Part shown: piece after piece, positions 3,022 to 24,200 of the stretch
Numbering within the stretch: the stretch's first letter is position 1
How the letters are laid out: each line of letters starts with the position of its first letter
Assembly: GCF_002113885.1 (NCBI RefSeq)
Contig: NW_018408780.1
Coordinates: 245,543 to 309,542 of the forward strand
Direction: 5' to 3'
Length of the DNA: 64,000 bases
From: Mizuhopecten yessoensis
Lineage: Eukaryota
The notes under the pieces: model-generated
Seen by the model: only the letters and a program-made list of their open reading frames with translations
What the model was told of the DNA's origin: nothing
Databases searched by the model: none
Position numbers and translations under genes: made by a program

Positions 3022-3268
3022 TCAGTTTGTGTCATCACTGCTTTCTGTGTCTGAATCCGAACTACTTTCATCTGAACTGTCTTTTCTCTTCTTTGTTTTC
3101 CTTGAATTGATATGAGAGTTCTTTCCCTTGACAGAATGGGATGAGAGGGAGCCACTGGGTGGCTGTGTGGTGTACACGTTCTGTGTACTGGAGACACGAT
3201 CTGTGCTAATCTTGCTGTTCCCCGTCGCTGATACTGGCCTTGTCTTGGTTTTCATTCGAATTGTTGGG
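3022..3268 (-). CDS. CSTPP1: CSTPP1 main terminal exon (PTIRMKTKTRPVSA...RKTKKRKDSSDESSSDSDTESSDDTN*)
   Basis: ttttttcag acceptor, phase 2; basic-then-acidic Ser-rich tail resembling the human C11orf49 C-terminus; lies within ORF 3022..3306. Confidence 0.85.
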
Positions 3269-6200
3269 CTGAAAAAATACAATTGAAAACTTTTTGTATC
3301 CTTCATATATAACTGTTTTACAACTGAACTGATAAAATGCTTAACTTTAAATAACTCCAGTTACAAAAACTTTCAGCACTCGAACAAAACAAACCCTGTC
3401 TACCATTTAAATGATATTCCCAAAGTCAAACCTTGTTCGTCCCAACACTGAAACACACATTCATTGAAGAATTTTGTAGGATCTGGTCAAAGATTCTACA
3501 AGTGAACAAATCATTCTTAGGAAATTAACAACACAAACAATTCAATTTAGTATTGCGCAGGAGCTGTATCTTTATGTGCAAGCCACTAGTCTTTTTTCAA
3601 CCTGGTTAATATCTCATGTATAAGCCTGCTTGTGCTGGAGATGTTATAATTGGGTTCCCCATGCTTCCAAAGGCAGTATTTTTTTTATAGAACCACCTCA
3701 TTCAAAGGTTACAACACAGGCACAGGACACCCACCCCTAGCTGTTTTGTATACTCGGGGTGGGGGTTGGGGTCTGTCTTCATTACATCGTGTTGATGATG
3801 TGTGGGAAAGAAGAAAAAACACTCTTTCTCTGAAAATTCCAGGCAACGATAAACCCCAACTGTCTTTGAAGTTTGTGAAAGGCTAGAGTATTAACTATGT
3901 GGTTATGCTGGTGGAAATTTGATCGACAGTTTTGCAGTATAGATATTTCTAGATGGACCATAGTTAATTTTGAGAAATGTGATCATCAGCTGCCAATACA
4001 TATAGTCTTCTGGAATGCAAATTTCCTTATTATTAACAAGTAAAAATAGTAGGTACAAAGGTATAAAGATTTTTCTCAAGATTAATGGAGCTCGGATTGA
4101 TGATGTTTGACTGTACACAATAAATCCAGAGAACTAAAATCGGTAACAAATCTCAAAATAAAAACATGCAGAGATGTAATTTCCATTATCATACAAATCT
4201 GAAACTTTTCATTTGTTAAACGGAAATTCTGCACAGTCTCTTTCACTTGTAAACATAGTTTCTGAAAGGAAATTGCGCACAAATTAATATAGAACAGTTA
4301 ATGTTAAAACATCTCACGGGTATCTGTGCTTATGACTATATAAAAGATAATTCAGTTCACAGGCTGATTATATTATATAGTGTGCAGCAGTGAGGCAGAT
4401 AGGTCGTGATAATATAACACAGTGAGGCAGATAGGTCGTGATAATTAACACAGGTAAGCACTTATCATCAAGGGTAAGGTATACACACACATGAAGACAG
4501 AAAGTACACAGGAGATTAGGAAATTAGAATATTGCAGCGATCATTTTATTATGTTGAGTGTAACCTGTGTAAACTCAATCCTGTATATATCATTTAACCT
4601 ATTCCTAAACATCTAAATGTAACTTCTCTACACCGAACCCTATATAATCTGGAACCTTGCATGAGCTTGATTTGTGTACTTGTGACCTGTTACACTGACC
4701 TTTGTCAGCAAAGTTGTGCTTTATACATTTCTATGTAGAACCTGAGTAAATCTAAAACATTTCTAATCTGACAGGAAGTTTTGTTCATTGTGTGTTTGAG
4801 GCAAGTTTAATGGTACAAATATGGAAAGAAAAAGTAATAATCTTAGAATCATTCAGTTACAAATCAAATGTATTTTCAGAAAATAAAGATTATACAGCAT
4901 TCAATGTTTTTGTGAACTTTGTAAAGTTATATGCAAAAAAAATATATATAAAATTATATAAAATTATTTTCTTTATAATAATCATGCAGAGTTTCAATGA
5001 ATTATTTTATTCCTTGATATTAAAATGAATTTCAAACAGAATATTTAAATACATGCATATTTGAATAATATTACAAATATAGTAAATTCATCAGTAGATA
5101 TATTGAGATGACTATGCTAAAATGTATACCATGCATCTGACTACATCTAGGATTACAAACCAAACTTTAGCAGCTTGAGATATGTACATACATATAAAAT
5201 TTGATATAAAATTTCAGAAGAATACTAAGTGCAGTACATGTTTTCAAAACATGAAAAGGCATCACAATGCTTTTTAAATCTTCACTATAATACTGTTTAA
5301 AATGTTTGCATACAGAAATAACTTGTGGGTGCAAACTTGATGCTTCATTCATATTACTTCTATATTAGTAATATTACTTTCAGAAGGCCTAGGGACAATT
5401 CCTTGTGCAAGAAAATACAAGAAGAAACTCAGCTCAAAAATATAGGTGCACAAATCCCATCTTTTTTGTTTGATAGTACAATTTTTGCACATCAGAAAAA
5501 TGAGGGTGTAGGAAATTAGAAAATACTAATATTAATAAAGCCACTTTGTCAATTTCTATATTTTTTTCTATCAAAATCAGTCAAATTGTCTAAATTTAAA
5601 TATCACTTACTGACAACATTTATTAGACTGGAATTATATGTGAGCCTGTTTAGATTATTTATGCTGTCGTTATAGATAAACATTCTTCCTTTATTTTTCA
5701 CGGACAGGAGAAAGTGCACTTGTAGGGATGAACATAAGTGTCACCAGTCAGAAACTTCACTAAGAAATAAAAACATTTGTTCAGAGAAATGTTATATAGA
5801 CAGTCAATCAGAATCAGAATGTATTGATATAGAAGTACTGTATTTGTCCAGCAATAAGCCCATGCCTGATAATAAGCCCATCCAATACTATCAAATGATA
5901 TATTCCGTCTTTTCGTATTGCAGAGTTATCTGCTCTTGTGAGCAGGTATTGATTGTTACGTTATTTGTTTGTGAGAGTAACGTCATCAATTTTTGAGAAA
6001 ACAACGTAATTTTCTCACACAAACCAATGACGCAACAATCAATACCTGCTCACAAGAGAAGATAACTCTGCTATACGCAAAGACGGAATAGCATGACAAT
6101 CAACCAGCATCACTATGTATTAATATAGATGTACTGTATTTGTCCAGCAATATGCCCATGCCTTGTAATAAGCCCATCCATATCAAATACAGTCCAGTAA

Positions 6201-9200
6201 AATCAATACTATCACATGCTATTTCTTTGTCTTGCAGTAAGACCTACCCCTACTTTTCCAACACTTGTTTGGCCCCCTGGCTTACTACAGGTTAAATACG
6301 GCATGACATATAGAAGATATCAACGAAGCGAAGGTTGGTTTGGAGTTGTATACATTACAGTGAGTTAATTATCAAGTATTATAACTAACAACCTTCAATT
6401 ATAGGTTAAAATTGAGATTTAACTCATGGAATATAAAGTGAATATAAATCACATTCAATCTGTTCCACCCAACACACAAATTATTAAACCAAAATCGTGT
6501 GATATCATGCCATGTCAGGTTATTTCACGGTGTGAAATTACCTATATAAAATAAAGCCGTGGGTAGCGAGTGGTGAAATTATTGGAGAAATGAAAGTGTT
6601 TTACAGAATATAGACATTTGCAGCTTTGTCTACAGAAATAAATAAGCAGATAATACAAACAAATCTTTACCTAGGTCTGAAGCACAATGGACATGCAATA
6701 AAACATGAAAATCTGTTAGTTTACACACAAGCAAAATAAAAAAGGTAGTCTTTACAATGACTCATGATCCAGATTATGATCAATTAGTAACACCTATTAA
6801 TTAGGCATAAATAAAATGTCACCTAGTTTACAGTGTTGAAACTACAGAGACAACACTTAAAAAGGGTGAAAAAAGAAGAATGTGAAAAAAAAGTTCTGAT
6901 AAAAAATTCACTGCTTCCTTCACATTTTACTTGTTATATTTTCTGTTATTTTGTTTATTTAAAAAAAACTAACTAAAATAAGCAATGTTAATATTGAAAA
7001 AAAAATATGAAGTTGCCACATTTAATTCTATCTATAGGTGTAGTAATGTATATGCGATGTTTATCTACATTTGGGTGATAAAAATACTACCAGTTCCCAT
7101 GCATGAAATAACAAAAGTCACAGGGGGTTGTAACATTCTTTTTCGTTCGGCTCACAGGGTACAGTAAATTGAGATCGGTGTAAACATTAACATGCTGAGG
7201 TGATTTACACTCTTTACACACTGTTCATTTCATACATAATTTTTCAAAAACTGCTTTAAAATTAATTACTGACAATATGAATGTGTCTGTCAGAGTTTAT
7301 GAAGAGAACATTGGATAAGAGCACCTCACCAAAATACCCATTCTTACACTATGTCAATACACATTAATCAAACCACCACCACCACTAACCCAGCCAGTAC
7401 TAATCCAGTTCTCTCAGTATCCAACCTGTATTTTAGGAAACAAGTTGTCCCACTATTAAGCCAGTGTTTTAGGGAAAAGATTTTTTCCTGGTCCATCTAT
7501 GCAGCTAGCATCGTAGTGTTTCAGGAGACCCATATATCTTTCCCTATGTTAAAATGTACCAGTAACCAAGTTATCTCACTATCCCGTTAGGTTTTTTTGG
7601 AGTGAAGGTGTCCGGATTACTGACGACCCTTCGTACATATTTTTTATATCTCCAGTAAGATAAAAGAAATATACAAGGCCCTGTGACTCAAGTCTACAAC
7701 ATCAGTTCTACCCTTTGACCTAACTACTGACAAGACATGTGCATTATACATACAAATTCTCTACCTGCTTTTACCATCTACATATACCGGTATATACGTT
7801 ATGTATACTTTAAGCAAAACCCAAATATACAAATTTCTACAAAATTACAATAAGAAAATTCTACCTCATTTTCCAAACAATGGATTTGCTTCCTTTTATT
7901 TGCAAATATTTGTAAATATGTGTGGGAAATATCCGATACTTGCACCAAAGTTAAGTGAGACTTTTTCTTTTTCCTGAAAAAATATGAATACTACAATGTT
8001 TGTTTTCCTTACTTTATTTCTTAAAATATATTCTTAACTCTGATAACCACTGTTGCCGAGTATCATTCAAACAGAATTGGAAGCAAAGCATTAAAAATGG
8101 AATTTTTAGAAAATCAAGTCTATTTTGTTTTCTTTTATAAACAGGTACTAAACTGAATAAGGTTTTTTTATTAATCCTATTTTTACAGAGAATACCATTA
8201 GCCTACTTGCCTGTGCCTTAACTGAACAAGTTTTAATGGTTGAAAAGCTCAGGACTATGTGCAGTAAACATCCCCCCCCCCTGATTAAGCTTCTAAATTA
8301 AAATAGGGTAATGAATCAATTGTTCTTTTCTTGTGCTTTCTAGAAATGAATTATGAAGTTATATTTTAGTAATTAATATCGCATATATTTTTATTGGATG
8401 ATAATTTGACCTGAAGATAACATAATATCAATATATAATGTTATATAAATATAGAGTGTACAATATGTGTGAATGTAATAAAGTATACCATATTTGCCGT
8501 ATGTTTCAGCAGTGAAATAAGGGGCCATAACTCTGTTAATAACAGTCTGATAATGTAGTTATCAAACTTCTCACAACTATCAAGACTATCAACCTACCTA
8601 TGAAGGCTGGATTTTATCTGTTGATAATTACCCAAGATATTGAGCAGACACTGTTTCAATAGTTGAATAAAGAGCTGTAATTCCATAAATTACAGTAAGA
8701 TAATTTTGTTCATCAAATCTGTCCAAGTTGTCATGGTAATTAACCTATATATGAAGTTTGAAGTTAATCTGTTGAAAAATACTTCAGACATGGAGCAAAC
8801 ACTCTTTTGGCAAATAAGTAAAGGGCAGTAACTCCTTAAAATATGCTTGGATAATTCTGGTTATCAAACTTGTCTGAGGTTTCGTGGTACCTTCTTCTGA
8901 AGTTTAAAGTTATCCATTGAAAAGTACTCAACATATCGAGCGGACACTATGTGCCTACCCACCTACCTGTCCACCCACATAACATATTACACCTGTCTTT
9001 CAACGAGTGTATTATTACCACTGAAGATAATCTGCATCTGTTTTCTACTTTAAAGCACTAGTCATTGTCTGTTATGGGCTATAACCTGAACCCTTTCACC
9101 ACTGTAGACCATAATGGACTCATCCTGATCAATGGGTGGAAGTGTCTACTAAAATTACATAGGGTTGAAAGGGTTAAGATTAGGGTATCTGAAACTATGG

Positions 9201-12200
9201 AGACCATTATATAAGGACTACAGTGGTATAAAAACCTGGTGACAAGTTTGGTCGAGGGGGTACAGTGTTGAACACTCAGGTGCTCCAGGCATGTTCTTAC
9301 TGATAAAATATAGGGTGAGGGTTGACTCTCACGGCAAATACGGTACCACTCTATTGTTTGTGCAAATGACTGGGTAAACTGCTTAAATTAATTGTGTGTC
9401 ATGTAAGCAATTTTACCGATTTAATGTCATTTATAAGGAATACATATTAAATTTGATTTCATTACATTTTCATGTTAAAAAGATAAGTAGCAATGATCAA
9501 ACGCAAGGCAGTGTAATTGCCAAATTTCAAGACAATAAAATTTGCAAAGCAATGTTGAGTGACAAATTAGGTTTTCACATCAGCAGCTGATAGATACCTG
9601 GCATGAGCTTGGGGATTTGGCACTGTCAGTTGAGGATTAATAGCCACAGTTTGACCGCTAGGATTTCTGTAAAATGGTCAACATGGTCACACAACACACT
9701 TTATACAGAAAAGAATTATTAATACATATACAAAAGAAAATAATTCAAAATAGTAAATAAATATATCGACAATATCAAACAACATCAAGTAGCTATATAG
9801 TATATACTTTATATCAATATTATATTAGTCAAGGCCATTATGGCTTTACAGTATCTAGGTCAAGCATGATTAAAAACAGTAACATGCAAAACAAAGTATG
9901 TCTATATTCCTTGTATATAAACAAGGTTAAGCGTCACTTAAAAATTGTAATAGTCAAGGTCAAGCTTCAGTTTACATTATATTAGTCAAGGTCAAGCATC
10001 ATCATAGATTAATTGTAATATTCAGGGTCAAGCTTCAGGATACATTATAACAGCCAAGGTCATGCATCAGTGTGTATTATATATAATCAAGGTCAAACAT
10101 CAGCATGTTTACATTATAATAATAGTCAAGGTCAAACATCAGCATGTTTACATTATAATAGTCAAGGTCAAACATCAGCACATATACATTATAATAGTCA
10201 AGGTCAAACATCAGCACATGTACATTATAATAATCAAGGTCAAAGTCAAGGTCAAACATCAGCAGGTTTACATTATAATAGTCAAGGTCAAACATCAGCA
10301 TGTATACATTATAATATTCAAGGTCAAACATCAGCACGTATACATTATAATAGTCAAGGTCAAACATCAACACTTATACATTATAATAGTCAAGGTCAAA
10401 CATCAGCCCTTACACATTATAACAGTCAAGGTCAAACATCAGCATGTATACATTATAACAGTCAAGGTCAAACATCAGCATGTATACATTATAATAGTCG
10501 AGGTCAAACATCAGCGTGTATACATTATAATAGTCGAGGTCAAACATCAGCACGTATACATTATAATAGTCGAGGTCAAACATCAGCGTGTATACAATTA
10601 TAAAAGTCAAGTTCAAAGCAACACAAAACTGACATATAATATAGATCTCTTCATAAAACCATTTCTTCTAACAGAAATTATATAAGATTATGTGTTGCCT
10701 TCCAGGACTCTATAAATACAGCATCAATCGCTACTACATATTATAGGCATTCCTGTCTTATAATGTATGTTATCCTGTAAGTGAACTTCTCTGATAAAAC
10801 GGGCTGCAGAGAACATGATCATCAATTGTTTTCACTTTTTCTGTAAAAAAGATCATTTTCAGGTTCCATACCATCTATGTACATGTATCAAATCAGATTG
10901 GAAAAAATTACCCTATCAACAAAGTCTAAAGATGATCTGTTAAACAGGTAAACAAAATATATCTGAAAGGTCAATTATGATGCATGTACCATAATATTAA
11001 AATACATGGAAACATGAAGGAGGTAAAATGGTGTATATGTATATCAAAACTACATAACTCACATTTCATTTCAACAAAACTGGTATATTTTATTTCAAAC
11101 AAATTATACAAGCTCTATATATTATAAAATCCACTGTATATATGAAAACATAATCTGTTGTACATACATTCTTGGTTAGGTATAAAATGTAATAACTAAG
11201 TACCAATATGTACAGTTATAAACGTGTTTATAAAGAACCCAACAGTGGACAGATGACCATGCATTTGATGATGTCCAAGGAACGATACCTAGTGGACAGC
11301 TGACCGTACGTGCATTTGATGATGTCCAAGGGACGATGCCTTAAAATCACATGTGTTCATTATAAACATATTTTACAAATGTACATGGAACTAATTACTA
11401 ATATATATGTATAAACTTGATTTCTTTGGCAAAATCATACATTCAAATCCCTACATCAGTAACCACATAAGTAAACACATATCACTGACCTGTCCACCAA
11501 TGTAGAAAATTAATTTGTCATCTCTCTGAAAGTCTAGGTGCTTTAGATTTCATGGAGGACTTTTCAACCAAAATAATTATGACAGAAAAATAGCCTGTAG
11601 GCAATGTTAACAACATTGGTGAGAATTGTTTCTCTTTGAACACCAGGCAAAGTAGGTGGAGATTATTCAATATGTTTATACAGAGAAACCTCTATATAAC
11701 GTCCCTCACTTTGTTTTCCAACCCACTTTATTGCCAAACTTTACACATACTTCAAAGTTCCCTTTTCCCTATGAATATTTCTTTTTATTCCTCCCTTAAA
11801 AACATTACCAAAACCCTTTATAATTGCAAACTCCTTTGTAATCCAAAACTTTTTTATAATCCCAGACTCGGTTGTGACACCTAAGTCTATGAAATGCTTA
11901 ATTAAAATAATACAAACGGGGGCAGTATACACGATAATACAAACGGGGGCAGTATACACGATAATACAAACGGGGGCAGTATACACGAAGGGTTTACCCC
12001 ATTCTCACCTGTATAACACACAAACTGGTAACTAACCAAACATAATTCAGGGTTTACTTTCAGACAGGTGACAAAAAAATATATATACAAACTTCGATCC
12101 ACACAACATTCTGAACACAATTTTTTTACATTGTTGAACACATATATTACATAAAGACGATCATTGAAAAAATTGGCTTAAAAATATTACTCCAGACTCA

Positions 12201-15200
12201 AAAGGTGACTGTCCTTTAAAGTTAAAACAATGATTGTTCAAGCTGAAATATGACTATCACCTGGATAAATATAATTCGTTATTGTAGTAAATGCCACTTA
12301 TCTCACTAAATATGATAAAATACTATTAATATATAAACTTATATATATGATTACTGGCAATTAAAGCAAAATGTATGGCAAATAAATGATAAATACTGTC
12401 ATTTAATAAAAAAATTATACCCGAATAAATTATTGGTTTGTAGCACTGCGTTATAACCTGTAAATAACATAAGCTTTTAAGAATGTCAGAAAATGGACAG
12501 CAACTTTGGAGTGAACTTTCAGTGTTCTCAGGAAGGGTTTCCATCCGTTTTAGTTTGTAAATGGTCAGAAGATCATTGCACAATTACCGAGTCAAGTTTC
12601 TTTGATGTATAATGGCTAATTATACAGATATCTTATGAGTTTGATTGGCAACAGTGACCAAAGAAAGTAACTCGCGGGAAAGACATTGAAAATACTAAAA
12701 CAAAGTATTGGTAGATATTTTCACTGGGATAATGTTACTTTTTTGACCAGCAAGAGTCCCACTTCACTGAGTGGTAAGCTCTTTCCCGAGGCCAAGGACT
12801 ACAGTCTGCCTTCAAGGGATACTAGTGCGTTATATGTAATACATTGACTATATTTCGTGAGTGTCCATTCTGCAACATTATTTTTTATTAAGCCCAACAT
12901 TTAGACTAACGCTTGTGTCGACCTTACGACCACCACTAGAAATATAGATCCCGTGGAGGGGGGGTTACAAACTTACAAGAATCTGTAACCAACATCTGTA
13001 TCAACCAAGATACTGATATCACTGCAAATGGTAGTAAAAGTTTGCATCTTGTGGCTTGGAATGTTGTTTTTTAAGACATTTTAAACATAGATAGAATGTG
13101 TGTATATACCTGCTAGAGACAATACTTTCAAAAATGACATATTTTGAGTTGTTCTTTCAGATAAAATCATTAGTTCTTAGATTACAGGAACAGTTTAGCA
13201 ATAATTCACTGGTTGAAAATACGTCACCCACCTAAGGGAGAGAAGGCAAGCATGACTACAAAGGTATAATAACAACAAAAACATATACCGGTAGACTTAA
13301 ACATTTTTTATGCAAATAATTATGATTAAGTGTTAGATGGCCCCCTGTGATAAATTTATATACAGTTATAGACTGGGCAGGAGGCAAATAGTTTTTTTTA
13401 TTACCCTTGAAGGCAAACTATTTTATGAGGCCAAAGGCATGCAAGAACTTCATAAAGTAGTGTAGACTGTATTTTGTGTGACTATTCTACTTGTAAACAA
13501 CTAACCTCCATACTTACTTAGCAAGCTGTACGGGTGGCCTGAGAAAGAATCACAGAGCATCTGGATATACTGAAATACTTGTAAGCCTAGCATGACCAGA
13601 TGCATTGTGGGGATGAATTTGTATCTCCGATTAAATTCTTTCAATTCAAAATCATATTCCTCTAAATAACACAAAGACAAAAAGAAAAATTTATAACTTT
13701 ATCTGCATGTCCAAATAATTATTCAAATTCTTTTACAGAAAATCTTTTGAACAAAAATTTTCAAATTTTAATTATATTCAATACTTTGTTAATATTTTTT
13801 TTTAAATCACAAAATGTTAATCTGAACATTTTTTTATGAAATTAAAACCATTTTTAGTTAAAACGCTCAGTCTTAATTATAAAGATTATGTTATGGAAGA
13901 AATTGCTTTGACCATATTTATGTGAATTGGCTATAGGTCTTGTCTTTGGGAAGATATTGAGTCTACGAAGGAAAGCATGCAAACACACAGTTATACGTAC
14001 ATTACTGCAAAGAAATGTACACGACTGAAGTACAGAATAGATAGTTACTGGCACTGATCTACCTAAACATCACCGACAGAAGTTCTTCTGCAACTAATGG
14101 TGGATTATCTAATGTTCATTTAACACAAGTTTGTTAAAAACTGTATAAAATACTATTTTAAAATTAACTTATTAGAGTTGGATAAACATAATAACCATTT
14201 TTGTTGGAAATACTATACAAGATTCCTATTTTTGATGAGGTTCCCATTTACCATGAATCATTACACCACAATGGAGGAGGGCTGGCCAATGACAAGTGTG
14301 TGTGTGTGTTGGTGTGTATGTGTTTGTGTGTGGGGAGGGGAGGGGCCCCTGTATGGCTTGTTTGGAGTTATTATATGTGTTCTGCATGAAAAATTCAGTT
14401 AAAAAAACAAAACTTATATTGAGAAAATTTTTAAACTGAATTTCTACAATCAGACTGGGGGGAAAAGTCCACATATAATTGGTAAGGAGCTGAACATCGG
14501 CATAATTTATAGAAGGAGCGAGTGCTTGTCTGCTACTAAAAGTTTGGTTTGCCCATTGATACAAATATATTCATTTTTGATAAAAAAAAAAAACTTATTT
14601 AATAATCATTACCATTAATTGTTTTGCAATTAGCAAACATACATAGATATACAGCTAAACCTGCCTTATCCAACCCCTGAGTATTCTGTCAACTGTCAAA
14701 TCTGACATACAGCTGCAATTCATTTCTTATGAAAGCTAATTAATAATGCAGGTTTAATTAATCTTTCACTTCCTTGTCGGATCCAAGAGGGTCTAAGATT
14801 TGACAGGTTTTTCTGAAATAATCCAAGCAATTGAAAATAAGCAGTGAGCTTCTATGACTTTCTCTCCTAACATTGGTAAAATAAAGAATTATTTTTTGAC
14901 TAGGCAACTATAAATTAATTCTTTGCTCATTGGAATTTCTAAAACTTAACTAATTCAGGTGTTCCTCATCATTCCATTTATAATTATTTGGCTGTGATGG
15001 AAGGGGAAACACTGCCCCTCTTTGCCTTATTTCAAAGAATAAAAAACAAATATTTAATTTATTTGGATTACCTCCCTTTGTGCTGCATATATATAAAAGG
15101 TAAACTTTGCTCCTTTTTTAATTTATTTCAAGGTTTCATCAGAATCTGAAAATATTCGTTAGGGTATTGAATGGAAACCATCAATCAATTAAAGTGATGT

Positions 15201-18200
15201 ATGGTTTATAATTTTACATATTTTTGCCCAATTTCAAACTCAGTCTGAGCCTGCGAACAGATTTGACGGGCAGAACACGAGAAACAGGCATGTGAACAGA
15301 TTTGACGGGCAGATCTCGAGAAACAGGCATTCTCCATACCCTAATCGGACACAATTTTGACAGATATGTTATACAATTTATTACCTAAATCTGGTTGATT
15401 TTTCTTGTTCAGCGAGTCATTTTTTATTAGTATTTTTATTAAGATAACTGGATAGCTGTTTATTTCATCACAACCTAAGAAACATAAAAACAAGGAATTG
15501 AAATTTCAGTGTCCATGTACTTTTTTAGGCAAAACAAAAACTCTGTTTAAATAAGGTAAAATGTATACATTTTTGCAATATATTATTTTCTTTCATAACT
15601 GAAATTCAAGAAGTTTTGGTCCACAAAAACTGTGGCTAACAAGGGAACTATATGTAAGGATAAAACTAAAGCAGGAAGGATTGGACTAGAGGTTACATAT
15701 ATTGATGTGTGTATATAGACATATCAGCTTCAGATTCACTGATAACTTACTTTGTTGGCTTTTTACTGTAAACATAGTAATGGTAATGTCATTAGTCTGT
15801 CATCTGTAGAAAATTAACATAAATATTATGTAACTAAAAATGTCCATCTCCTTGTTAAAAAATAATGTCCGTCCCCAAATCCACCTCCTTGTTAGAAAAT
15901 AATGTCCATCCCCAAGTCCACCTCCTTGTTAAAAAATAACATCCATCCCCAAGTCCACCTCCTTGTTAGAAAATAATACCCATCCCCAAGTCTTCATCCT
16001 TGTTAGAAAATAATACCCATCCCAAAGTTCATCTCCTTGTTAAAAATTAACATCCAACGCGAAGTTCACCTCCTTGTTAAAAAATAACAACCATCCCCAA
16101 ATTAACCTGCTTGTTAAGAAATAACATCCATCCCCAAGTTCACCGCCTTGTTAAAAAAAAACATCCATCCCCAAGTTCACTGCCTTGTTAAAAAAATAAC
16201 ATCCATCCCCACGTTCATCCCCTTGTTAAAAAATAACATCCATCCCCAAGTTCACCGCCTTGTTAAAAAATAACATCCATCCCCAAGTTCACCTCCTTGT
16301 TAAAAAATAATATCCATCCCGAAGTTCACCTCCTTGTTAAAAATTAACATCCATCCCCACGTTTATCCCCTTGTTAAAAAATAACATCCATCTCCAAGTT
16401 CACCGCCTTGTTAAAAAATAACATCCATCCCCAAGTTCACTGCCTTGTTAAAAAAATAACATCCATCTCCAAGTTCACTGCCTTGTTAAAAAATAACATC
16501 CATCCCCAAGTTCACTGCCTTGTTAAAAAAATAACATCCATCCCCAAGTTCACTGCCTTGTTAAAAAATAACATCCATCCCCAAGTTCACTGCCTTGTTA
16601 AAAAAATAACATCCATCCCCAAGTTCACCGCCTTTTTAAAAAATAACATCCATCCCCAAGTTCACTGCCTTGTTAAAAAATAACATCCATCCCCAAGTTC
16701 ACTGCCTTGTTAAAAAAATAACATCCATCTCCAAGTTCACTGCCTTGTTAAAAAATAACATCCATCCCCAAGTTCACTGCCTTGTTAAAAAAATAACATC
16801 CATCCCCAAGTTCACTGCCTTGTTAAAAAATAACATCCATCCCCAAGTTCACTGCCTTGTTAAAAAAATAACATCCATCCCCAAGTTCACCGCCTTGTTA
16901 AAAAATAACATCCATCCCCAAGTTCACTGCCTTGTTAAAAAAATAACATCCATCCCCACGTTCATCCCCTTGTTAAAAAATAACATCCATCTCCAAGTTC
17001 ACCGCCTTGTTAAAAAATAACATCCATCCCCAATTTCACTGCCTTGTTAAAAAAATAACATCCATCCCCACGTTCATCCCCTTGTTAAAAAATAACATCC
17101 ATCCCCAAGTTCACCGCCTTGTTAAAAAAATAACATCCATCCCCACGTTCATCCCCTTGTTAAAAAATAACATCCATCCCCAAGTTCACTGCCTTGTTAA
17201 AACGTTTTATTTGCACGCCTTTAAAAATGTTATTCAGAAAGAGGACAAAACAAGATCAATAACTATTTTGAAAAACATACGCTTAGGGTGATTCTAGTAA
17301 ATGCATCCTGTCTACTTTGTGCTGGATAAACACATGGTGGGTATAGATTTTCAACAATCAAAAACACTGCATGGGCCTTTTGGAGAGCAAAACTTTTGAT
17401 TGGAAGAGATTTTGTTTTTCCCTGCTGGAATTTTTTTGTGGGGGATGTGATCAATCAAATGTGAGAGTCGTCTACAAACAAGACATTTGGAATTGTCATC
17501 AAGGACACAAATGGTAAATCTTGGTTCTATATATTCTTAGTCTTTGGAATGTACACTGTAATATGGTAATTAGTCTACTTTCACAATCGCATATTATAAT
17601 TAGAGTTACTTCCCCTGAAATTTACAAGAACAAGGCTCAGCCACAAATCAGTTATCTGTACCTTCCTTTAGGCATCTAGCAATAGTTGGAATATGGAATA
17701 TATATAAAGCATACTGACTGGAGGGTTTAGCTCATTCACCCCTGAAGACACATTTTAACTCTTCCAAATCAAAGGTTGGAATAGTTCATTTTGAAATTTC
17801 AGGGGTGAATGAGTTAAGTGAACAACTGTATATCAACAACATATAACACACGGTTTGTTATCACACCACACAGCACTCCAACCCGCTACCACTAGTAAAG
17901 CACCAGAAGCAACAGAACAATGCCAGTATAAAACTGTACCAATACTTGACAGAGAAAATCCAATTATGAAATAATAGATTTCATTAAAAATCCATTTGAA
18001 TGAAAGCAATACAGTATTGTACCAAAAACTATCAAATGATATAGACTTCTTGAATTTTTGGAAGATAATAATCAAATAATCTAGCAACGCTGCTTACAAA
18101 ATTTCTCAAAAAAGTAGCAATTAAACAAATTAAAGTTGTGTACAAATATTTTACAAGCCAAATAATTATGTTTTCCGCATTAAAAAATCTTCTTCATGAA

Positions 18201-21200
18201 ATATTACTTTAAAAAACAAAAATTGAAACTGTACAAAAAATGTTTTGTGGCAAAAAATAATCATATTAATTGACAATAAAGTTTGTAGAGTTTGTTTTTG
18301 AGATGAGACAGAGAAATCAGCTCCACTTCCCCGAGTGCTACCGCTAGCCCCATTGTATCAGGAGCATTAAGATATACTCCCATTGACTAGACAACTTTTC
18401 AACTCATGGATCCTTGGAAATCTGAGAAAAAGAGAAACGTGACTGTATTACCGATATGTATATACTGGAGAACTGTTTTCTTCATATTTACCATAGATTT
18501 CATAGATTTAAAGCATTGGAGATCTACATTTGCCACTTTAAACCCTCAGTCAGATAAAAATATCGTAATGTTTTTACCAACAACAAGAAAGAAGAGGTCT
18601 AAAGGGTTTTGAATCGCTCACCTATGATTTTGTTAATGTATGATTTATAAATACCAATGAAAGCTATCTTGGATTTCAAATATGTACAAAAAGTAAATAG
18701 CACTACTTTTTTACCAATCTACATGATGAAACTGCTAGATTGAGTGGAAAAAAAGACCCAACCCATCAGGGGTCATGATCATGGATGTGAACTTTGAACT
18801 TTGATTGGACTCAAAAAAGAAAAAAAAAAAGAAAAAAAACATTCATTTGGAGTCATACATATGAGGACCTTTCCTTAAACGATATGTCAAAAAACTTTTA
18901 TTATCACAATGACTAGTTTGAATAAGATTTGAAAAAGAAATTGAAAGACATATTGAAATGTACTATGGCATAATGCATTTAGTTCATTTAATTGGACTAA
19001 GTGATATATAAAAATGGTAAAATGAAAAATAAATATAACAAAATAACTGTTTGGATCAGAAAATGTAATTTGCTATTTCAGAACCTGACTCATAACATGG
19101 AACTCACATAAACCCTGACACTACTTATAAGTCATAATCAGTCATTACTTGATTGGTAAATAATGATAACATTGTAACAAACGTTGTTGATTGTCTTGGC
19201 ACTTCCCATCACTACTGAAACGAGTAAAATAGTCAGTAGAAGTGACATCCGCTCCCCACAGAAGCTCCTGGGTTGTGGGTGTAAGCATAATAATTATGCT
19301 GGAAAATGAACATTTGTTCAGATTCCATACCATAATATGCCACCTTGTCACCTCAAAATTAACAGCGATATTCCTCTTCCAACATTTGGTTTAGATCGGA
19401 TGTATTGTTCAAGTGATATCAACCAGAAAGCATCATTTTCACAAAATTTCAATTAATTTATAGTTAGTATGACCTTGACCTTTGACCTAGTATTTCCAAA
19501 ATGGATTGAAAAGTACACCAGCCTTATGCTATGATAGATATAACTCTACAATCTCCATATTTCAGTAATTTTGATGCTATATGTGATTTGCCTGAAGTAA
19601 ATTTAAGTGAGCAATATTATGTCCAACATACTGACACATAATCTAGGTCACATGTAACTGTTTTCTCTGTAGTTTAAAAATTACTATTATTTTATCATCG
19701 ACAATCTGTTAGACACTTGTGTGTTTTTTTCAACATTTAATGGTTCATAAGTTTTCATAAAAGATTCCATTTTGTAAACAACTGTAATTCTGAACAGCAA
19801 TTATAGACTGATCACATTCAACAAATCACAGGAGCTGTAACATTATCTACTGAACATTCAACCAATCACAACCAATCACAGGAGCTGTAACATTATCGAC
19901 TGTACATTCAACCAATCACAGGAACTGTAACATTATCGACTGTACATTCAACCAATCACAGGAACTGTAACATTATCGTCTGTACATTCAACCAATCACA
20001 GGAGCTGTAACATTATTGACTGTAGTATTATAAGCCACACAAGCATCTTGTGTACCATGTATTGTTCTAGGCTCGGTTATAACCGGAACAAGGACGTAAA
20101 GCCCCACCAATCAATCAATCAATCATGTGTACCATGTATCTATATCATAGACATACAGTGTAGAGTCTGAACTGTGCCCTGTACAAATACTGTGGTTACT
20201 GGTAACTGAGAACTGTGGTTAACTGTTATGCCTTTACTCAGCTTAACCTTCATCAAATCTTAGCATAGCAAAATGTAAAGAAAGGAGGTTTTGTTTCTCC
20301 TTCCAAATGGTTTTCAACATTAATTAACTATCAACTTTTGCTTAAGAGCAATAATATGGACCTGGCTAATTAAATGATGAAAAAGTTACACAGTAATACA
20401 TGCATACATGCTGACCTCAGTTATCTAAGGGAGCTTAACTAACATAAACTACATGTAAAATGTGTCATATGGTACACCAATATATCCTTCAAACTAAGAT
20501 CAAACTGTCACAAAATCACATGCATAATTGCTAAATATCGTCCTGCATATTTAGCCAGGTCTTAGGTATAAAGTATTTTAAAACATAAATTAATATAAAG
20601 TGATCATGATCTTATTAACTTATTATAACATCAAATATATATCAGTGTTCCCTCAGAATTTTGCATTTTGGGGTATATTTGATACATTGATCTTCAAGAT
20701 TCTGTACCCCCTAGGTATGTATAAGGCAATTCTTGAAAACTGAGGGTACAGCCAACTGTTTTGGCGGTGAAAAACCCCTCATTTAGGGTTTCTAGGAACA
20801 CTGATAGATACATACATGTATATAGTAATTACATCTGAAATGTGAAATTAACACTGGCCAAATATGGACTTTACCATTAAAGTTTGAACACATGATTGGT
20901 GAAAGTTTCACAATACACAATTGTCCTCAGGAATCCTGGAGGAGGAGTAAAGTTGAGTACATGTGTTGAGGTTTTGTGAAGGAGGAGTGAAGTTAAGTAC
21001 ATGGGTTGAGGTTTTGTGAAGGGGGAGTGAAGTTAAGTACATGGGTTGAGGTTTTGTGAAGGAGGAGTGAAGTTAAGTACATGGGTTGAGGTTTTGTGAA
21101 GGAGGAGTGAATTAAGATCACACATGAGTCTACCCTTTATCACAGATGCTAAGCCTGTGTTTGGTATTACGCTACACCCACTTCCACTTTGTTGAACAGA

Positions 21201-24200
21201 AATTTTACCATAATTCACCAGCAATAAACACCCCTTGTTAAACCCATTCACCACTGTAGACCATAATAGACTCATCCAGATGAGTGTATGGTAGAGTCTA
21301 CTCAAGTTACCTAGGGATGAAAGGGTTAAAAGAAAATTTTACCTTAATTCTAGTATCCAGAATAAAGATTTTTTCTGGATTAATGACACTGATTTTGTAA
21401 TTGAAAATCAGTCCTCACCCTCCCTTCCACTTCTACTTCTTTACCCCAGTAAAACACACCATTTGTATAGAGAACCATTGGGACACCAGGTGTATATATA
21501 TGGGAGAGAAAGGGATAGCTTACGATGTTAATTCGGAGTCAGCTCCTTCTAATAGTTCAGCCTTCGGAGGGAGTCTCCCTGAAAACAGTGTAAAACGTTC
21601 AAGCTACAATAAGTGCAATGCAGAATTTTAAAGTCACAAGACAGAAAAGACAGTTAAGCGATTGTGAATGACAAAAAAACATTAAGAAAAATGAACCTTA
21701 TATGCATGTTATGAATTTTATTGGAAAAGTTTATTTTTAGTATGTTCTGGTTTCACGTCATGCCTATACTTTCAAATTTTTACAGAACTACCAGGTATCT
21801 GAATATCGATTTAAGGGATGATTCTTACTGTTGTAATATGTTAATAAATATTGTTCTGAATACTGAAATTTGTATGTTTATTGGTAATAACAATACTATA
21901 AGTGATATATGATTTAAACAATATGTTTGGTTGATATTCTTTGTGGGACTCAAGTAGGTCACAATACCATCTGTTTGATGTTTTGATGTACAAGTATTTC
22001 ATCTTTATAAAATGTTTCAGGAATAGAATGGGATACTTAGAAAACAAGACAACACTCGTTCATAGAAAAAAAAGTTAGATACAATGTATCGGTATATTAT
22101 TCAATGTTGAGGAAATAGTTTCTGGAAAAAAAGTATTGGGAGAAAAGTGCAACACCATATAAACACAACTGGTTTTCTATTCATATTCACTCTCTAAACT
22201 CTAAACAAACAAAATAACTGGGATTTTTATTGGAAAAAATCAAAACAAATCAGAAGAAAAGTTTTAAGTGCAATTGTGCCAAATAATTGTGGTATCACTG
22301 TACTGAAGTCAAAAAAGGCGTGCTGAAACGATCTGGTAATAAAGACATAATAAGCACACCAGCTCTCCTTACAAGGCTATTTCCGACTCTGGTCCCTCCA
22401 AAAGTTCCGACTTTTGGGGCATCCATCCTGTAAACAGATCACCATACTACTGTACTACTGTACACACTACTGTCAAATAACTGTACACATTACTGTACAT
22501 ATAACTGTACACACTACTGCACATATCACTGTACATATTACTGTACTACTGTACATATAACTGTACACACTACTGTACATATTACTGTACTACTGTACAT
22601 ATAACTGGACACACTACTGTACATATTACTGTACTACTGTACACACTACTGTACATATTACTGTACAAATTACTGTACTACTGTACATATAACTGTACAC
22701 ACTACTGTACATATTACTGTACTCCTGTACATATAACTGTACATATTACTGTACAAATTACTGTACTACTGCACATATAACTGTACACACTACTGTACAT
22801 ATTACTGTACTACTGTACATATATGTATGCGAGATGTTATCTCTCTATTGTAGAGTTTCCGGATCCACTGTATGTCTACATGTTTTAGATTATGTGTGTT
22901 ATCATTCTTGTGTCCTTAAGTATCCAAATAGAAAAAATGACCATATGGTGAAGTAAAAATGTATTCTTTGCTTGTCGTTCTGTATCCATATTTTCTTTTT
23001 ATTGAATAGGTGCTTCATTACAATTATTTGGTTATAATGACAGCCAACTATGTAAACTGAATTAAATTTGCCAAGATTCCCTATTTGATGATGTCTGGTC
23101 ATCTCCTCTTTTGAATTTTTTGGCTAGACCATCCTCGATATCCAGGGGTTACGCTTACTTTCGCTCTCTACACCCCTGGAATATGTCATGGCAACATTGA
23201 AGGCACGAAGATAGCTGTTTGATTGGTCTCAGGTATAAAAAACTGACCAATCGCTAGGCTGATACCTGTCCTTTGAAGATTTCAAAGGAGAGACGCCCGA
23301 CTTCAAAGCCTGTCAATTTTTACCGTTACGTTACATGAACGCGAGATTCTTTTGATGTACATCAAAGGATCGGAATTAGTCTTGAACAAGGTGGCGCACA
23401 TCTATTTTGCCATGACATATTCCAGGGGTGTAGAGAGCAAACGTAAACGTAACCCCTGGATATCGAGGATGTGGCTAGACTAGTGAACTCCATTTAAGAA
23501 TCCCTTAACTGGAGTAAGCAGAATTTCGCTGAACATTCACTAGCAGATGTTGGATCTAATTTTCCTTTGTATCCATAATTATTTTTCATTTCAAGTGATT
23601 ATGACTAGTAAATCTATACAATTTAACTGATTATAGGATGGTGCCACAATAATCTTAACTACTGCCTTACGAGGTCAAGGCCAATTTTTCCTGAAAGTGC
23701 TATACAAATAGTCTACATAATATAATATGACTATCTAAGTTGTCTAAATAGTTGATTTTAAAATAGGTAGAGACGACAAAAAATTATATCTATCATATTG
23801 TTGATACTGAAAAATGCTTTAATTTCGCAGGATTAACTTATCAGACTGGTTACTGTCAAATTCACCCTATAATGCTATTAACAGTCAAGCCTTTTTTTTT
23901 CAAAGTGGAATTTTTCATTGTATATTGTTCACAGATCTATATATTTATATACCAGATATGTTAATTTTAACATGTACAATATACTGTCAAATGTATAATA
24001 TGCAAAAGGTTGAATAAAAACATGTTAATTTGAAAACAGTCAAGGCTTACTTATACTGTATCACAATGGTAATTAATGTGTAATGAAGGGTAAATATTTT
24101 GAATATATTTTCAGGCCATAAGTTTTAAGCAGATTTGACCTCTGTGATATAAAAGCACTATACATCATCCTTTCCTACAAGCTTTATATATATAATCATC

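What the first reader, a model, noticed from the sequence alone, without database searches (positions are those of the whole stretch)
3022..22427. Combinatorial C-terminal splicing module in a tubulin-polyglutamylase regulator (CSTPP1)
Seen: after constitutive exon 7, the minus strand carries two alternative 55-nt exons, a candidate early terminal exon and five short AG...GT-bounded segments of 15, 21, 45, 69 and 6 nt. All five are multiples of 3 and stop-free in the phase-2 register needed to join exon 8 to the last exon. Chained together they read ...ELTSKKPTKPPVQLANDISILVDTDVGYRFLNPSGQTVAINPQLTVPNPQAHARPSPTIRMK... (+52 aa). Caveat: I scanned by eye and discarded out-of-frame candidates, so frame preservation is partly a selection criterion; three have the ideal GTAAGT donor. 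Known: C11orf49/CSTPP1 associates with the TTLL1/TPGS complex and centriolar satellites, and frame-preserving micro-exons commonly tune disordered regions in neurons. Inference: a modular, tissue-regulated linker (up to 2 x 32 + 2 theoretical isoforms) that could adjust glutamylase targeting in cilia, sperm or neurons. I am not aware of this being described.
Basis: partly seen in the sequence, partly recalled or inferred. Interest (0 to 1): 0.85.

Follow-up and report, generated by a model that had tools for sequence, protein, structure and literature searches.

The report
Alternative tail exons of scallop CSTPP1
Four of the five tiny candidate exons are real, conserved, optionally used exons in the floppy tail of a scallop tubulin-glutamylase regulator, but public gene models already carry them and the fifth (45 nt) has no support.

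Summary
The window is Mizuhopecten yessoensis. Its minus strand carries the CSTPP1/C11orf49 orthologue (99% identical to RefSeq isoform X2).

That alone is chance level: about 650 such segments occur in the same 18 kb.

Independent evidence:
- **21, 69 and 6 nt:** cassette exons in RefSeq isoforms X1-X5 of this species.
- **15 nt:** used in Pecten maximus and Argopecten isoforms, and near-identical (90-100%), flanks included, in three other pectinid loci.
- **RNA reads:** one run joins exon 8a directly to the 69-nt exon, and the 69-nt exon to ACCTAG plus the last exon.
- **45 nt:** in no isoform, not conserved, no junction seen. Probably a decoy.

It makes the last exon read in a second, conserved frame. 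An unannotated conserved candidate terminal exon lies at 18421-18367.

The tail is predicted disordered. Tissue regulation and any effect on glutamylase targeting were not tested.

The module is real but already in automated annotation (17 isoforms in Pecten) and absent from the searched papers. Interest is modest.

The scan's earlier notes on this window (8a/8b pair, 6-nt exon) agree with this. They are notes on this same window, not on other DNA.

The parts
22373..22427 (-). Exon 8b (55 nt, GWMPQKSELLEGPESEIA), the alternative to 8a
   Evidence: cag|...|gtaagg borders. Used in Pecten maximus X6/X8/X15 and one Argopecten isoform. Conserved in all three other pectinid loci. Not in the Mizuhopecten RefSeq models.
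21524..21578 (-). Exon 8a (55 nt, GRLPPKAELLEGADSELTS), the default of the mutually exclusive pair
   Evidence: 100% match to RefSeq X1-X5. RNA reads join its 3' end to the 69-nt exon. Including both 8a and 8b, or neither, gives an early stop.
18367..18421 (-). Candidate alternative terminal exon (S/L-FPRIHELKSCLVNGSIS*), conserved but unannotated
   Evidence: Strong acceptor tctttttctcag. The in-phase reading frame is kept in four pectinids, with the stop at the same place in three and two codons earlier in Argopecten, and with synonymous changes AGG/CGG and GAG/GAA. Found in none of the 260 fetched proteins. Conservation also extends into the flanks, so a regulatory element is equally possible.
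15751..15765 (-). 15-nt cassette micro-exon (KKPTK)
   Evidence: ttacag|TAAAAAGCCAACAAA|gtaagt. Exon plus flanks are 90-100% identical in L001, L002 and L003. Used in Pecten X1/X2/X4/X9/X11/X12/X17 and Argopecten XP_069132656. Not modelled in Mizuhopecten, and outside the stretch where reads were laid.
13518..13538 (-). 21-nt cassette micro-exon (PPVQLA-K)
   Evidence: In Mizuhopecten RefSeq X1 and X2. A 21-nt exon with GTAAGTAT donor sits at the syntenic place in all four pectinids although the peptide varies: LPVRLG, LPIKQG, QPVKLA. No junction was seen in the few reads.
12977..13021 (-). 45-nt candidate (DISILVDTDVGYRFL): unsupported, probably a decoy splice-site pair
   Evidence: Good-looking sites, ttgcag|...|gtaagt. 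In no isoform of four species. No homologue in L001-L003, even with word size 7. No joint or listed loose end in RNA. Single copy in the genome.
9598..9666 (-). 69-nt cassette exon (NPSGQTVAINPQLTVPNPQAHA)
   Evidence: In RefSeq X1-X4 and skipped in X5. 88-90% conserved in three loci. RNA reads end exactly at 9666 and 9598 and continue into exon 8a and into the 6-nt exon plus last exon.
7865..7973 (-). 109-nt frame-switch cassette exon (RKKKKSHLTLVQVSDISHTYLQIFANKRKQIHCLENE)
   Evidence: ttttcag|...|gtagaa, open in phase 2. 88-92% conserved in three loci. Used in Pecten X9/X10/X12/X16/X17 and Argopecten XP_069132658. Not modelled in Mizuhopecten.
6671..6676 (-). 6-nt micro-exon ACCTAG (adds R-P; read as T-stop after the 109-nt exon)
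   Evidence: In Mizuhopecten X1/X3 and Pecten isoforms. RNA loose end at 9598 reads ACCTAG followed by the start of the last exon. Upstream intron is conserved: ACTAAC branch-point-like motif, TTATTGCATG, TGTGC near the AG. Variant ATCTAG in L002. Not found in Argopecten.
3022..3268 (-). Last coding exon, read in two frames
   Evidence: The main frame, PTIRMK...SSDDTN*, matches all RefSeq isoforms. The second frame, PNNSNENQDKASISDGEQQD*, has its stop at the same place in four pectinids. The first 63 nt are 84% invariant against 62% for the rest.

Best explanation
The 19-kb stretch is the 3' half of the Yesso scallop CSTPP1 (C11orf49) gene. It holds a genuine alternative-splicing module that rewrites the protein's disordered C-terminal tail.

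Shown here:
- Exons 8a and 8b (55 nt each) are homologous alternatives. Taking both or neither breaks the frame.
- Four frame-preserving cassettes (15, 21, 69 and 6 nt) are included or skipped in many combinations.
- A 109-nt cassette shifts the frame. The first 20 codons of the last exon are then read in a second, conserved frame that ends in a short acidic tail.

Inferred:
- The combinations change the length, charge and short motifs of the tail. The folded N-terminal domain, which by homology sits in the TTLL1 polyglutamylase complex, is left untouched.
- The conserved intronic motifs next to the 6-nt exon suggest regulated inclusion.

The 45-nt segment is most likely a chance splice-site pair and not an exon.
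For: Gene identity:
- phmmer and tblastn give CSTPP1 (PF27900 CSTPP1_N) with 99% identity to XP_021373690.

Isoforms:
- Mizuhopecten X1 = 21+69+6, X2 = 21+69, X3 = 69+6, X4 = 69, X5 = none.
- Pecten maximus X1-X17 and Argopecten add the 15-nt exon, 8b and the 109-nt exon.

RNA:
- In run X22, 6 reads join 8a to 9666, and 3 reads at 9598 continue into ACCTAG plus the last exon.

Conservation:
- 8b, 8a, the 15-, 21- and 69/72-nt exons, the 109-nt exon and the last exon lie in the same order in three other pectinid loci. The 6-nt exon is found in two of them.
- The part of the last exon that is read in two frames is more conserved, 84% against 62% invariant.

Frames:
- Checked.

Disorder:
- The AF2 model has a fold up to about residue 262 and pLDDT 41-63 afterwards.

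CSTPP1 role:
- Together with LRRC49 it forms a peripheral, fine-tuning module of the TTLL1 complex (PMC13376646).
Against: - RefSeq X-models are automatic. Each junction is read-supported, but full-length combinations may be inferred, so true combinatorial independence is not shown.
- In this species the 15-nt exon, 8b and the 109-nt exon rest on conservation and on relatives' models, not on reads I saw.
- My one read-laying run had low depth (6 and 3 junction reads, one sample) and showed no 21-nt junction.
- No tissue comparison was possible, so regulation and function remain inference.
- The 45-nt segment has an ideal donor and a fair acceptor, so a rare species-specific exon is not excluded.
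Confidence: 0.8

Rival explanations
1. All five segments, including the 45-nt one, are real cassette exons. The 45-nt exon is a young, Mizuhopecten-specific exon used rarely or in a tissue not sampled.
For: Perfect GTAAGT donor, ttgcag acceptor with 67% pyrimidines, open frame. Single-copy sequence, not a transposon. Only about 6 informative reads were seen.
Against: Absent from all 29 annotated pectinid isoforms examined. No homologous sequence in three related loci, although every other exon is found. No joint at 13021 or 12977. A GTAAGT in an intron almost always has an in-frame upstream AG.
Confidence: 0.1
2. The isoform diversity is splicing noise or over-modelling by the annotation pipeline. 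The small exons are occasionally spliced in but have no selected function.
For: The tail is disordered and fast-evolving. The 21-nt exon's peptide differs in each genus. RefSeq combinations are model-derived. The sampled run is dominated by one path, 8a->69.
Against: - Exon length, phase and splice sites are kept in four genera.
- The 15-nt exon is 90-100% identical with its flanks.
- Intronic motifs upstream of the 6-nt exon are conserved.
- The second reading frame of the last exon keeps its stop and shows extra constraint.
- Other molluscs also insert cassettes at this same junction: oyster QEAAIQN(H)V, mussel EADS, Physella 22 aa.
Confidence: 0.1

Closest known systems
RefSeq (Gnomon) isoform models of the same gene: M. 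yessoensis XP_021373689-93 (X1-X5); Pecten maximus XP_033751469-86 (X1-X17); Argopecten XP_069132656-60
   Same: They contain the same 21-, 69- and 6-nt exons (this species), and the 15-nt exon, 8b and the 109-nt exon (relatives), at the same junctions.
   Different: In Mizuhopecten the 15-nt exon, 8b and the 109-nt exon are not modelled. No model has the 45-nt segment or the 18421-18367 terminal exon. No paper in the searched library discusses these isoforms.
Frame-preserving (neural, SRRM3/4-dependent) micro-exons of bilaterians (known from the literature, my own knowledge)
   Same: They are 6-, 15- and 21-nt exons, multiples of 3, in a disordered region, with conserved flanking intron. A UGC lies within 10 nt of the 3' splice site and a UGCAUG lies upstream of the 6-nt exon.
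   Different: Neural or other tissue specificity and dependence on an eMIC-domain factor were not tested. The motifs are short and could be chance.
Mutually exclusive exon pairs kept exclusive by reading-frame incompatibility
   Same: 8a and 8b are both 55 nt, homologous (about half the residues are shared) and adjacent. Both or neither gives a premature stop. Isoforms carry one or the other.
   Different: No docking/selector RNA pairing was found. Use of 8b in this species was not observed directly.
Dual-coding exons reached by alternative splicing (for example CDKN2A INK4a/ARF, GNAS XLas/ALEX; my own knowledge)
   Same: One stretch of the last exon is translated in two frames depending on an upstream splice choice. 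Both frames are conserved.
   Different: The overlap is only 20 codons and yields a short acidic tail rather than a different folded protein.

Membership tests
CSTPP1 / C11orf49 (Pfam PF27900 CSTPP1_N) | Homology of the N-terminal helical domain to CSTPP1 proteins | tested here: met
   An exon-3 translation finds 121 CSTPP1-like proteins. Homologues carry precomputed PF27900 and source names 'centriolar satellite-associated tubulin polyglutamylase complex regulator 1'. tblastn of XP_021373690 gives 377/381 identical residues. The local Pfam copy lacks this model, so it gave no hits.
CSTPP1 / C11orf49 | Association with the TTLL1/TPGS complex and centriolar satellites | not testable with these tools
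   Known for the mammalian protein (PMC13376646; PMC6627244 listed, not opened). Nothing was tested for the scallop protein.
Cassette micro-exon | Short exon (under about 30 nt; up to 51 nt in some definitions) with canonical AG/GT and length a multiple of 3 | tested here: met
   6, 15 and 21 nt. The 69-nt exon is a small ordinary cassette, not a micro-exon.
Cassette micro-exon | Transcript evidence for both inclusion and skipping | tested here: met
   21 nt: X1/X2 against X3/X4. 6 nt: X1/X3 against X2/X4, plus a mixed loose end in reads (agreement 0.84). 69 nt: X1-X4 against X5. 15 nt: Pecten and Argopecten isoforms only. 45 nt: none.
Cassette micro-exon | Cross-species conservation of exon and flanks | tested here: met
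   15, 21 and 69 nt in all four pectinids. 6 nt in three. 45 nt in none.
Neural (SRRM4-type) micro-exon programme | Neuron-enriched inclusion that depends on an eMIC-domain splicing factor | not tested
Only sequence motifs were seen.
Mutually exclusive exons | Homologous adjacent exons of equal length, with exactly one present per mRNA | tested here: inconclusive
   Equal length, homology and frame incompatibility were shown. Annotated isoforms of relatives have one or the other. No reads over 8b were examined in this species.

The most novel reading that the evidence does not exclude
Pectinid scallops keep a conserved splicing 'switchboard' in the CSTPP1 tail. It consists of one mutually exclusive pair, four frame-preserving cassettes, a frame-switch exon that uncovers a second conserved reading frame in the last exon, and perhaps an unannotated early terminal exon. 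Its tissue-regulated use (cilia-rich gill, sperm, neurons) would tune where or how strongly the TTLL1 polyglutamylase complex acts. The same exon-8/last-exon junction is also a cassette site in oysters, mussels and snails, which would make it an old molluscan control point.
Probability: 0.2. Interest if true: 0.55.

Novelty: new member of a known kind. Interest (0 to 1): 0.3.

Why it matters
CSTPP1 with LRRC49 is the peripheral, fine-tuning module of the TTLL1 tubulin polyglutamylase (PMC13376646). How that tuning is set in different cell types is unknown.

A conserved set of optional tail exons would be a concrete handle on it. Isoforms could be expressed and compared for satellite or cilium localisation and for glutamylation level.

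As it stands the exons are already in public gene models. So the value is a curated reading plus one rejected candidate, not a discovery. The curated reading covers which exons are real, the frame-switch exon, the dual-coded last exon and an unannotated conserved element.

Tried and rejected
- **Local Pfam scans:** exon translations and the full protein gave nothing, because the local copy lacks PF27900.
- **Rfam:** no match over 1-32000, so the conserved intronic blocks are no known RNA family.
- **Docking/selector pairing for 8a/8b:** an inverted-repeat search gave only AT-rich chance pairs.
- **Repeat origin of the 45-nt segment:** rejected, since it is single copy in the genome.
- **Simple splice-site filter:** it did not separate real from false. 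It passes the 15-, 21- and 45-nt segments but fails the real 69-nt and 6-nt exons.
- **Pecten X4 locus look-up:** failed, because only the longest product is on record. X1 worked.
- **Early terminal exon peptide:** found in no fetched protein.
- **Read laying:** it could cover only 6,000 bases.
- **Joined models:** Joined translations were made only inside a local script to check frames.
Full report
**What is there**

On the minus strand they are:

| Segment | Coordinates | Sequence context |
|---|---|---|
| 15 nt | 15765-15751 | ttacag\|TAAAAAGCCAACAAA\|gtaagt |
| 21 nt | 13538-13518 | |
| 45 nt | 13021-12977 | |
| 69 nt | 9666-9598 | |
| 6 nt | 6676-6671 | ACCTAG |

All are AG/GT-bounded, multiples of three and open in phase 2. 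Three have GTAAGT donors. The two 55-nt exons 8b (22427-22373) and 8a (21578-21524) and the last exon (3268-3022) are also correct.

**Is that more than chance?**

By itself, no. Between exon 8a and the last exon the minus strand holds 4095 AG..GT segments of 6-75 nt. Of these, 1377 are multiples of three, and about 650 are stop-free in any one phase. GTAAGT occurs four times, about what base composition predicts by my estimate, no shuffle was run. Such a donor nearly always has an in-frame upstream AG. A simple splice-site filter passes the 15-, 21- and 45-nt candidates. It fails the 69- and 6-nt ones, which turn out to be real. The sequence pattern alone therefore decides nothing.

**Which gene and genome**

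- A translated exon 3 finds 121 CSTPP1-like proteins.
- A full-length oyster-like homologue then retrieves named CSTPP1/C11orf49 proteins carrying PF27900.
- The best match to the window is XP_021373690, 'UPF0705 protein C11orf49 homolog isoform X2 [Mizuhopecten yessoensis]', with 377 of 381 residues identical.
- The window's assembly has 987.6 Mb in 82,659 contigs.
- Exons 1-7 lie at 29764-24272. The finding covers the rest of the gene.

**Evidence from annotated isoforms**

| Species | Isoform(s) | Optional exons used |
|---|---|---|
| Mizuhopecten | X1 | 21+69+6 |
| Mizuhopecten | X2 | 21+69 |
| Mizuhopecten | X3 | 69+6 |
| Mizuhopecten | X4 | 69 |
| Mizuhopecten | X5 | none |
| Pecten maximus | X1-X17 | also the 15-nt exon (KKPTK), exon 8b, and a frame-shifting cassette |
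| Argopecten | 5 isoforms | the 15-, 21- and 69-nt exons, 8b and the frame-shifting cassette |

No isoform of any species has the 45-nt peptide.

**Evidence from RNA**

Only one read-laying run of at most 6,000 bases was allowed. I laid two raw RNA-seq runs and two contig runs on 9560-15559.

- In run X22, six reads end at 9666. They continue, with agreement 1.0, into the reverse complement of the end of exon 8a (...LEGADSELTS).
- Three reads end at 9598 and continue into ACCTAG followed by the first bases of the last exon (agreement 0.84, so a mixture).
- The 69-nt exon, the direct 8a->69 junction and the 6-nt micro-exon are therefore seen in RNA.
- No joint or listed loose end touches 13021/12977 or 13538/13518.
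- Depth is low, so absence is weak evidence.

**Evidence from conservation**

I fetched the orthologous loci of Argopecten (L001), a fourth pectinid (L002, GCA_031769215.1) and Pecten maximus (L003).

- 8b, 8a, the 15-nt exon, the 69/72-nt exon, the 109-nt exon and the last exon are recovered by blastn in the same order.
- The 21-nt exon is found by its peptide, with conserved length and a GTAAGTAT donor, although its residues vary.
- The 6-nt exon is ACCTAG in Pecten and ATCTAG in L002. It has a conserved upstream intron: an ACTAAC branch-point-like motif, TTATTGCATG, and TGTGC next to the AG. It was not found in Argopecten.
- The 45-nt segment has no counterpart in any of the three loci, even with 7-base words.
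- It is single copy in its own genome, so it is not a transposon fragment.

*A 109-nt cassette at 7973-7865.* It is bounded by ttttcag|...|gtagaa and open in phase 2. It encodes RKKKKSHLTLVQVSDISHTYLQIFANKRKQIHCLENE and is intact here. It is used in Pecten X9/X10/X12/X16/X17 and in one Argopecten isoform.

Because 109 is not a multiple of three, the last exon is then read in a second frame, PNNSNENQDKASISDGEQQD*. That frame keeps its stop at the same place in all four species. The first 63 nt of the last exon are 84% invariant against 62% for the remainder, as expected for a stretch constrained in two frames. If the 6-nt exon follows the 109-nt exon it reads T-stop, as in Pecten X17.

*A conserved block at 18564-18279.* It contains a strong acceptor and a phase-compatible 17-codon frame (FPRIHELKSCLVNGSIS*). 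This frame is kept in four species, with the stop at the same place in three and two codons earlier in Argopecten, and with synonymous changes. It is in none of the fetched proteins, and conservation also runs into its flanks. An unannotated terminal exon or a regulatory element are both possible.

**How it most likely works**

The AF2 model of isoform X1 shows a helical fold up to about residue 262 and no structure afterwards, with pLDDT 41-63. All optional exons fall after residue 270.

The module therefore alters only a disordered tail. It adds a basic KKPTK, a P/Q/N-rich 23-residue stretch and R-P. Alternatively it swaps the long basic Ser/Thr-rich tail with its acidic end for a short acidic tail.

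8a and 8b are kept exclusive by frame: both or neither gives an early stop.

In mammals, CSTPP1 with LRRC49 forms a peripheral, fine-tuning module of the eight-subunit TTLL1 complex (PMC13376646). That the scallop tail variants tune targeting or regulation of this complex is inference only.

**Comparison with what is known, and novelty**

The exons are already in automated RefSeq models, so the core of the finding is not new to databases. Three full-text searches found no paper on CSTPP1 splicing in molluscs.

The kinds of feature are all known: cassette micro-exons in disordered regions, frame-enforced mutually exclusive exons and short dual-coded terminal exons.

The same junction also carries optional inserts in oysters (QEAAIQN(H)V), mussels (EADS) and Physella (22 aa). 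Several molluscs also have isoforms that end early after exon 8.

**Verdict**

The module is real. The 45-nt exon and the isoform arithmetic are not. Regulation and function are untested.
- Interest is modest (0.3).

**Limits**

Exon joins were translated only locally to check frames. The 15-nt exon, the 109-nt exon, 8b and the 18421 element were not covered by the read-laying stretch.

Noticed in passing
window 18279-18564 (minus strand); L001 16650-16767, L002 13385-13649, L003 16399-16651: Intronic block conserved in four pectinids. It has a strong acceptor and an in-phase 17-codon frame (FPRIHELK...) ending in a stop. It is in no fetched protein. It may be an unannotated alternative terminal exon or a regulatory element.
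   Followed up: partly
window 17814-17909 and 11041-11188 (minus strand): Two further intronic blocks are conserved with L002 and L003 (76-88% identity) and have no obvious exon features. The second contains AAATAAAATA. Both are unexplained.
   Followed up: partly
window 17727-17817: A 20-nt inverted repeat (95% complementary, 51-nt loop) sits where L002 has two conserved blocks directly adjacent. It looks like a small insertion with terminal inverted repeats.
   Followed up: no
window 9946-10623: A tandem array upstream of the 69-nt exon reads as long repetitive ORFs (VKVKHQHVYIII...). It also matches repeated arrays at the syntenic place in Argopecten and Pecten, so it may be a positionally conserved minisatellite.
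   Followed up: no
window 16408-17291: A second tandem array (repeated LKNNIHPQVHCLVKKITSI ORFs on the plus strand) coincides with a strong negative GC skew (-0.37 in 16001-18000).
   Followed up: no
window about 13083-13218: A short element has very high depth in RNA-like contig runs (over 1000 in X14) and many loose ends at 13131-13135 and 13163. It is probably a dispersed repeat carried in many transcripts. It lies 60 nt from the 45-nt candidate but not in it.
   Followed up: no
proteins P0003/P0123/P0125 (oyster-like), P0135/P0136 (mussel), P0168/P0170 (Physella): Other molluscs show optional inserts at the same exon-8/last-exon junction (9-10 aa, 4 aa and 22 aa). Several have isoforms that end soon after exon 8. 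The junction may be an old splicing hotspot.
   Followed up: partly
window 9560-9666, run X14 contig record 8: One contig runs collinear through the donor of the 69-nt exon into the intron, yet carries 57 non-matching letters upstream of 9666 that may belong to exon 8a but were not shown. This suggests a retained-intron or partly processed transcript.
   Followed up: no
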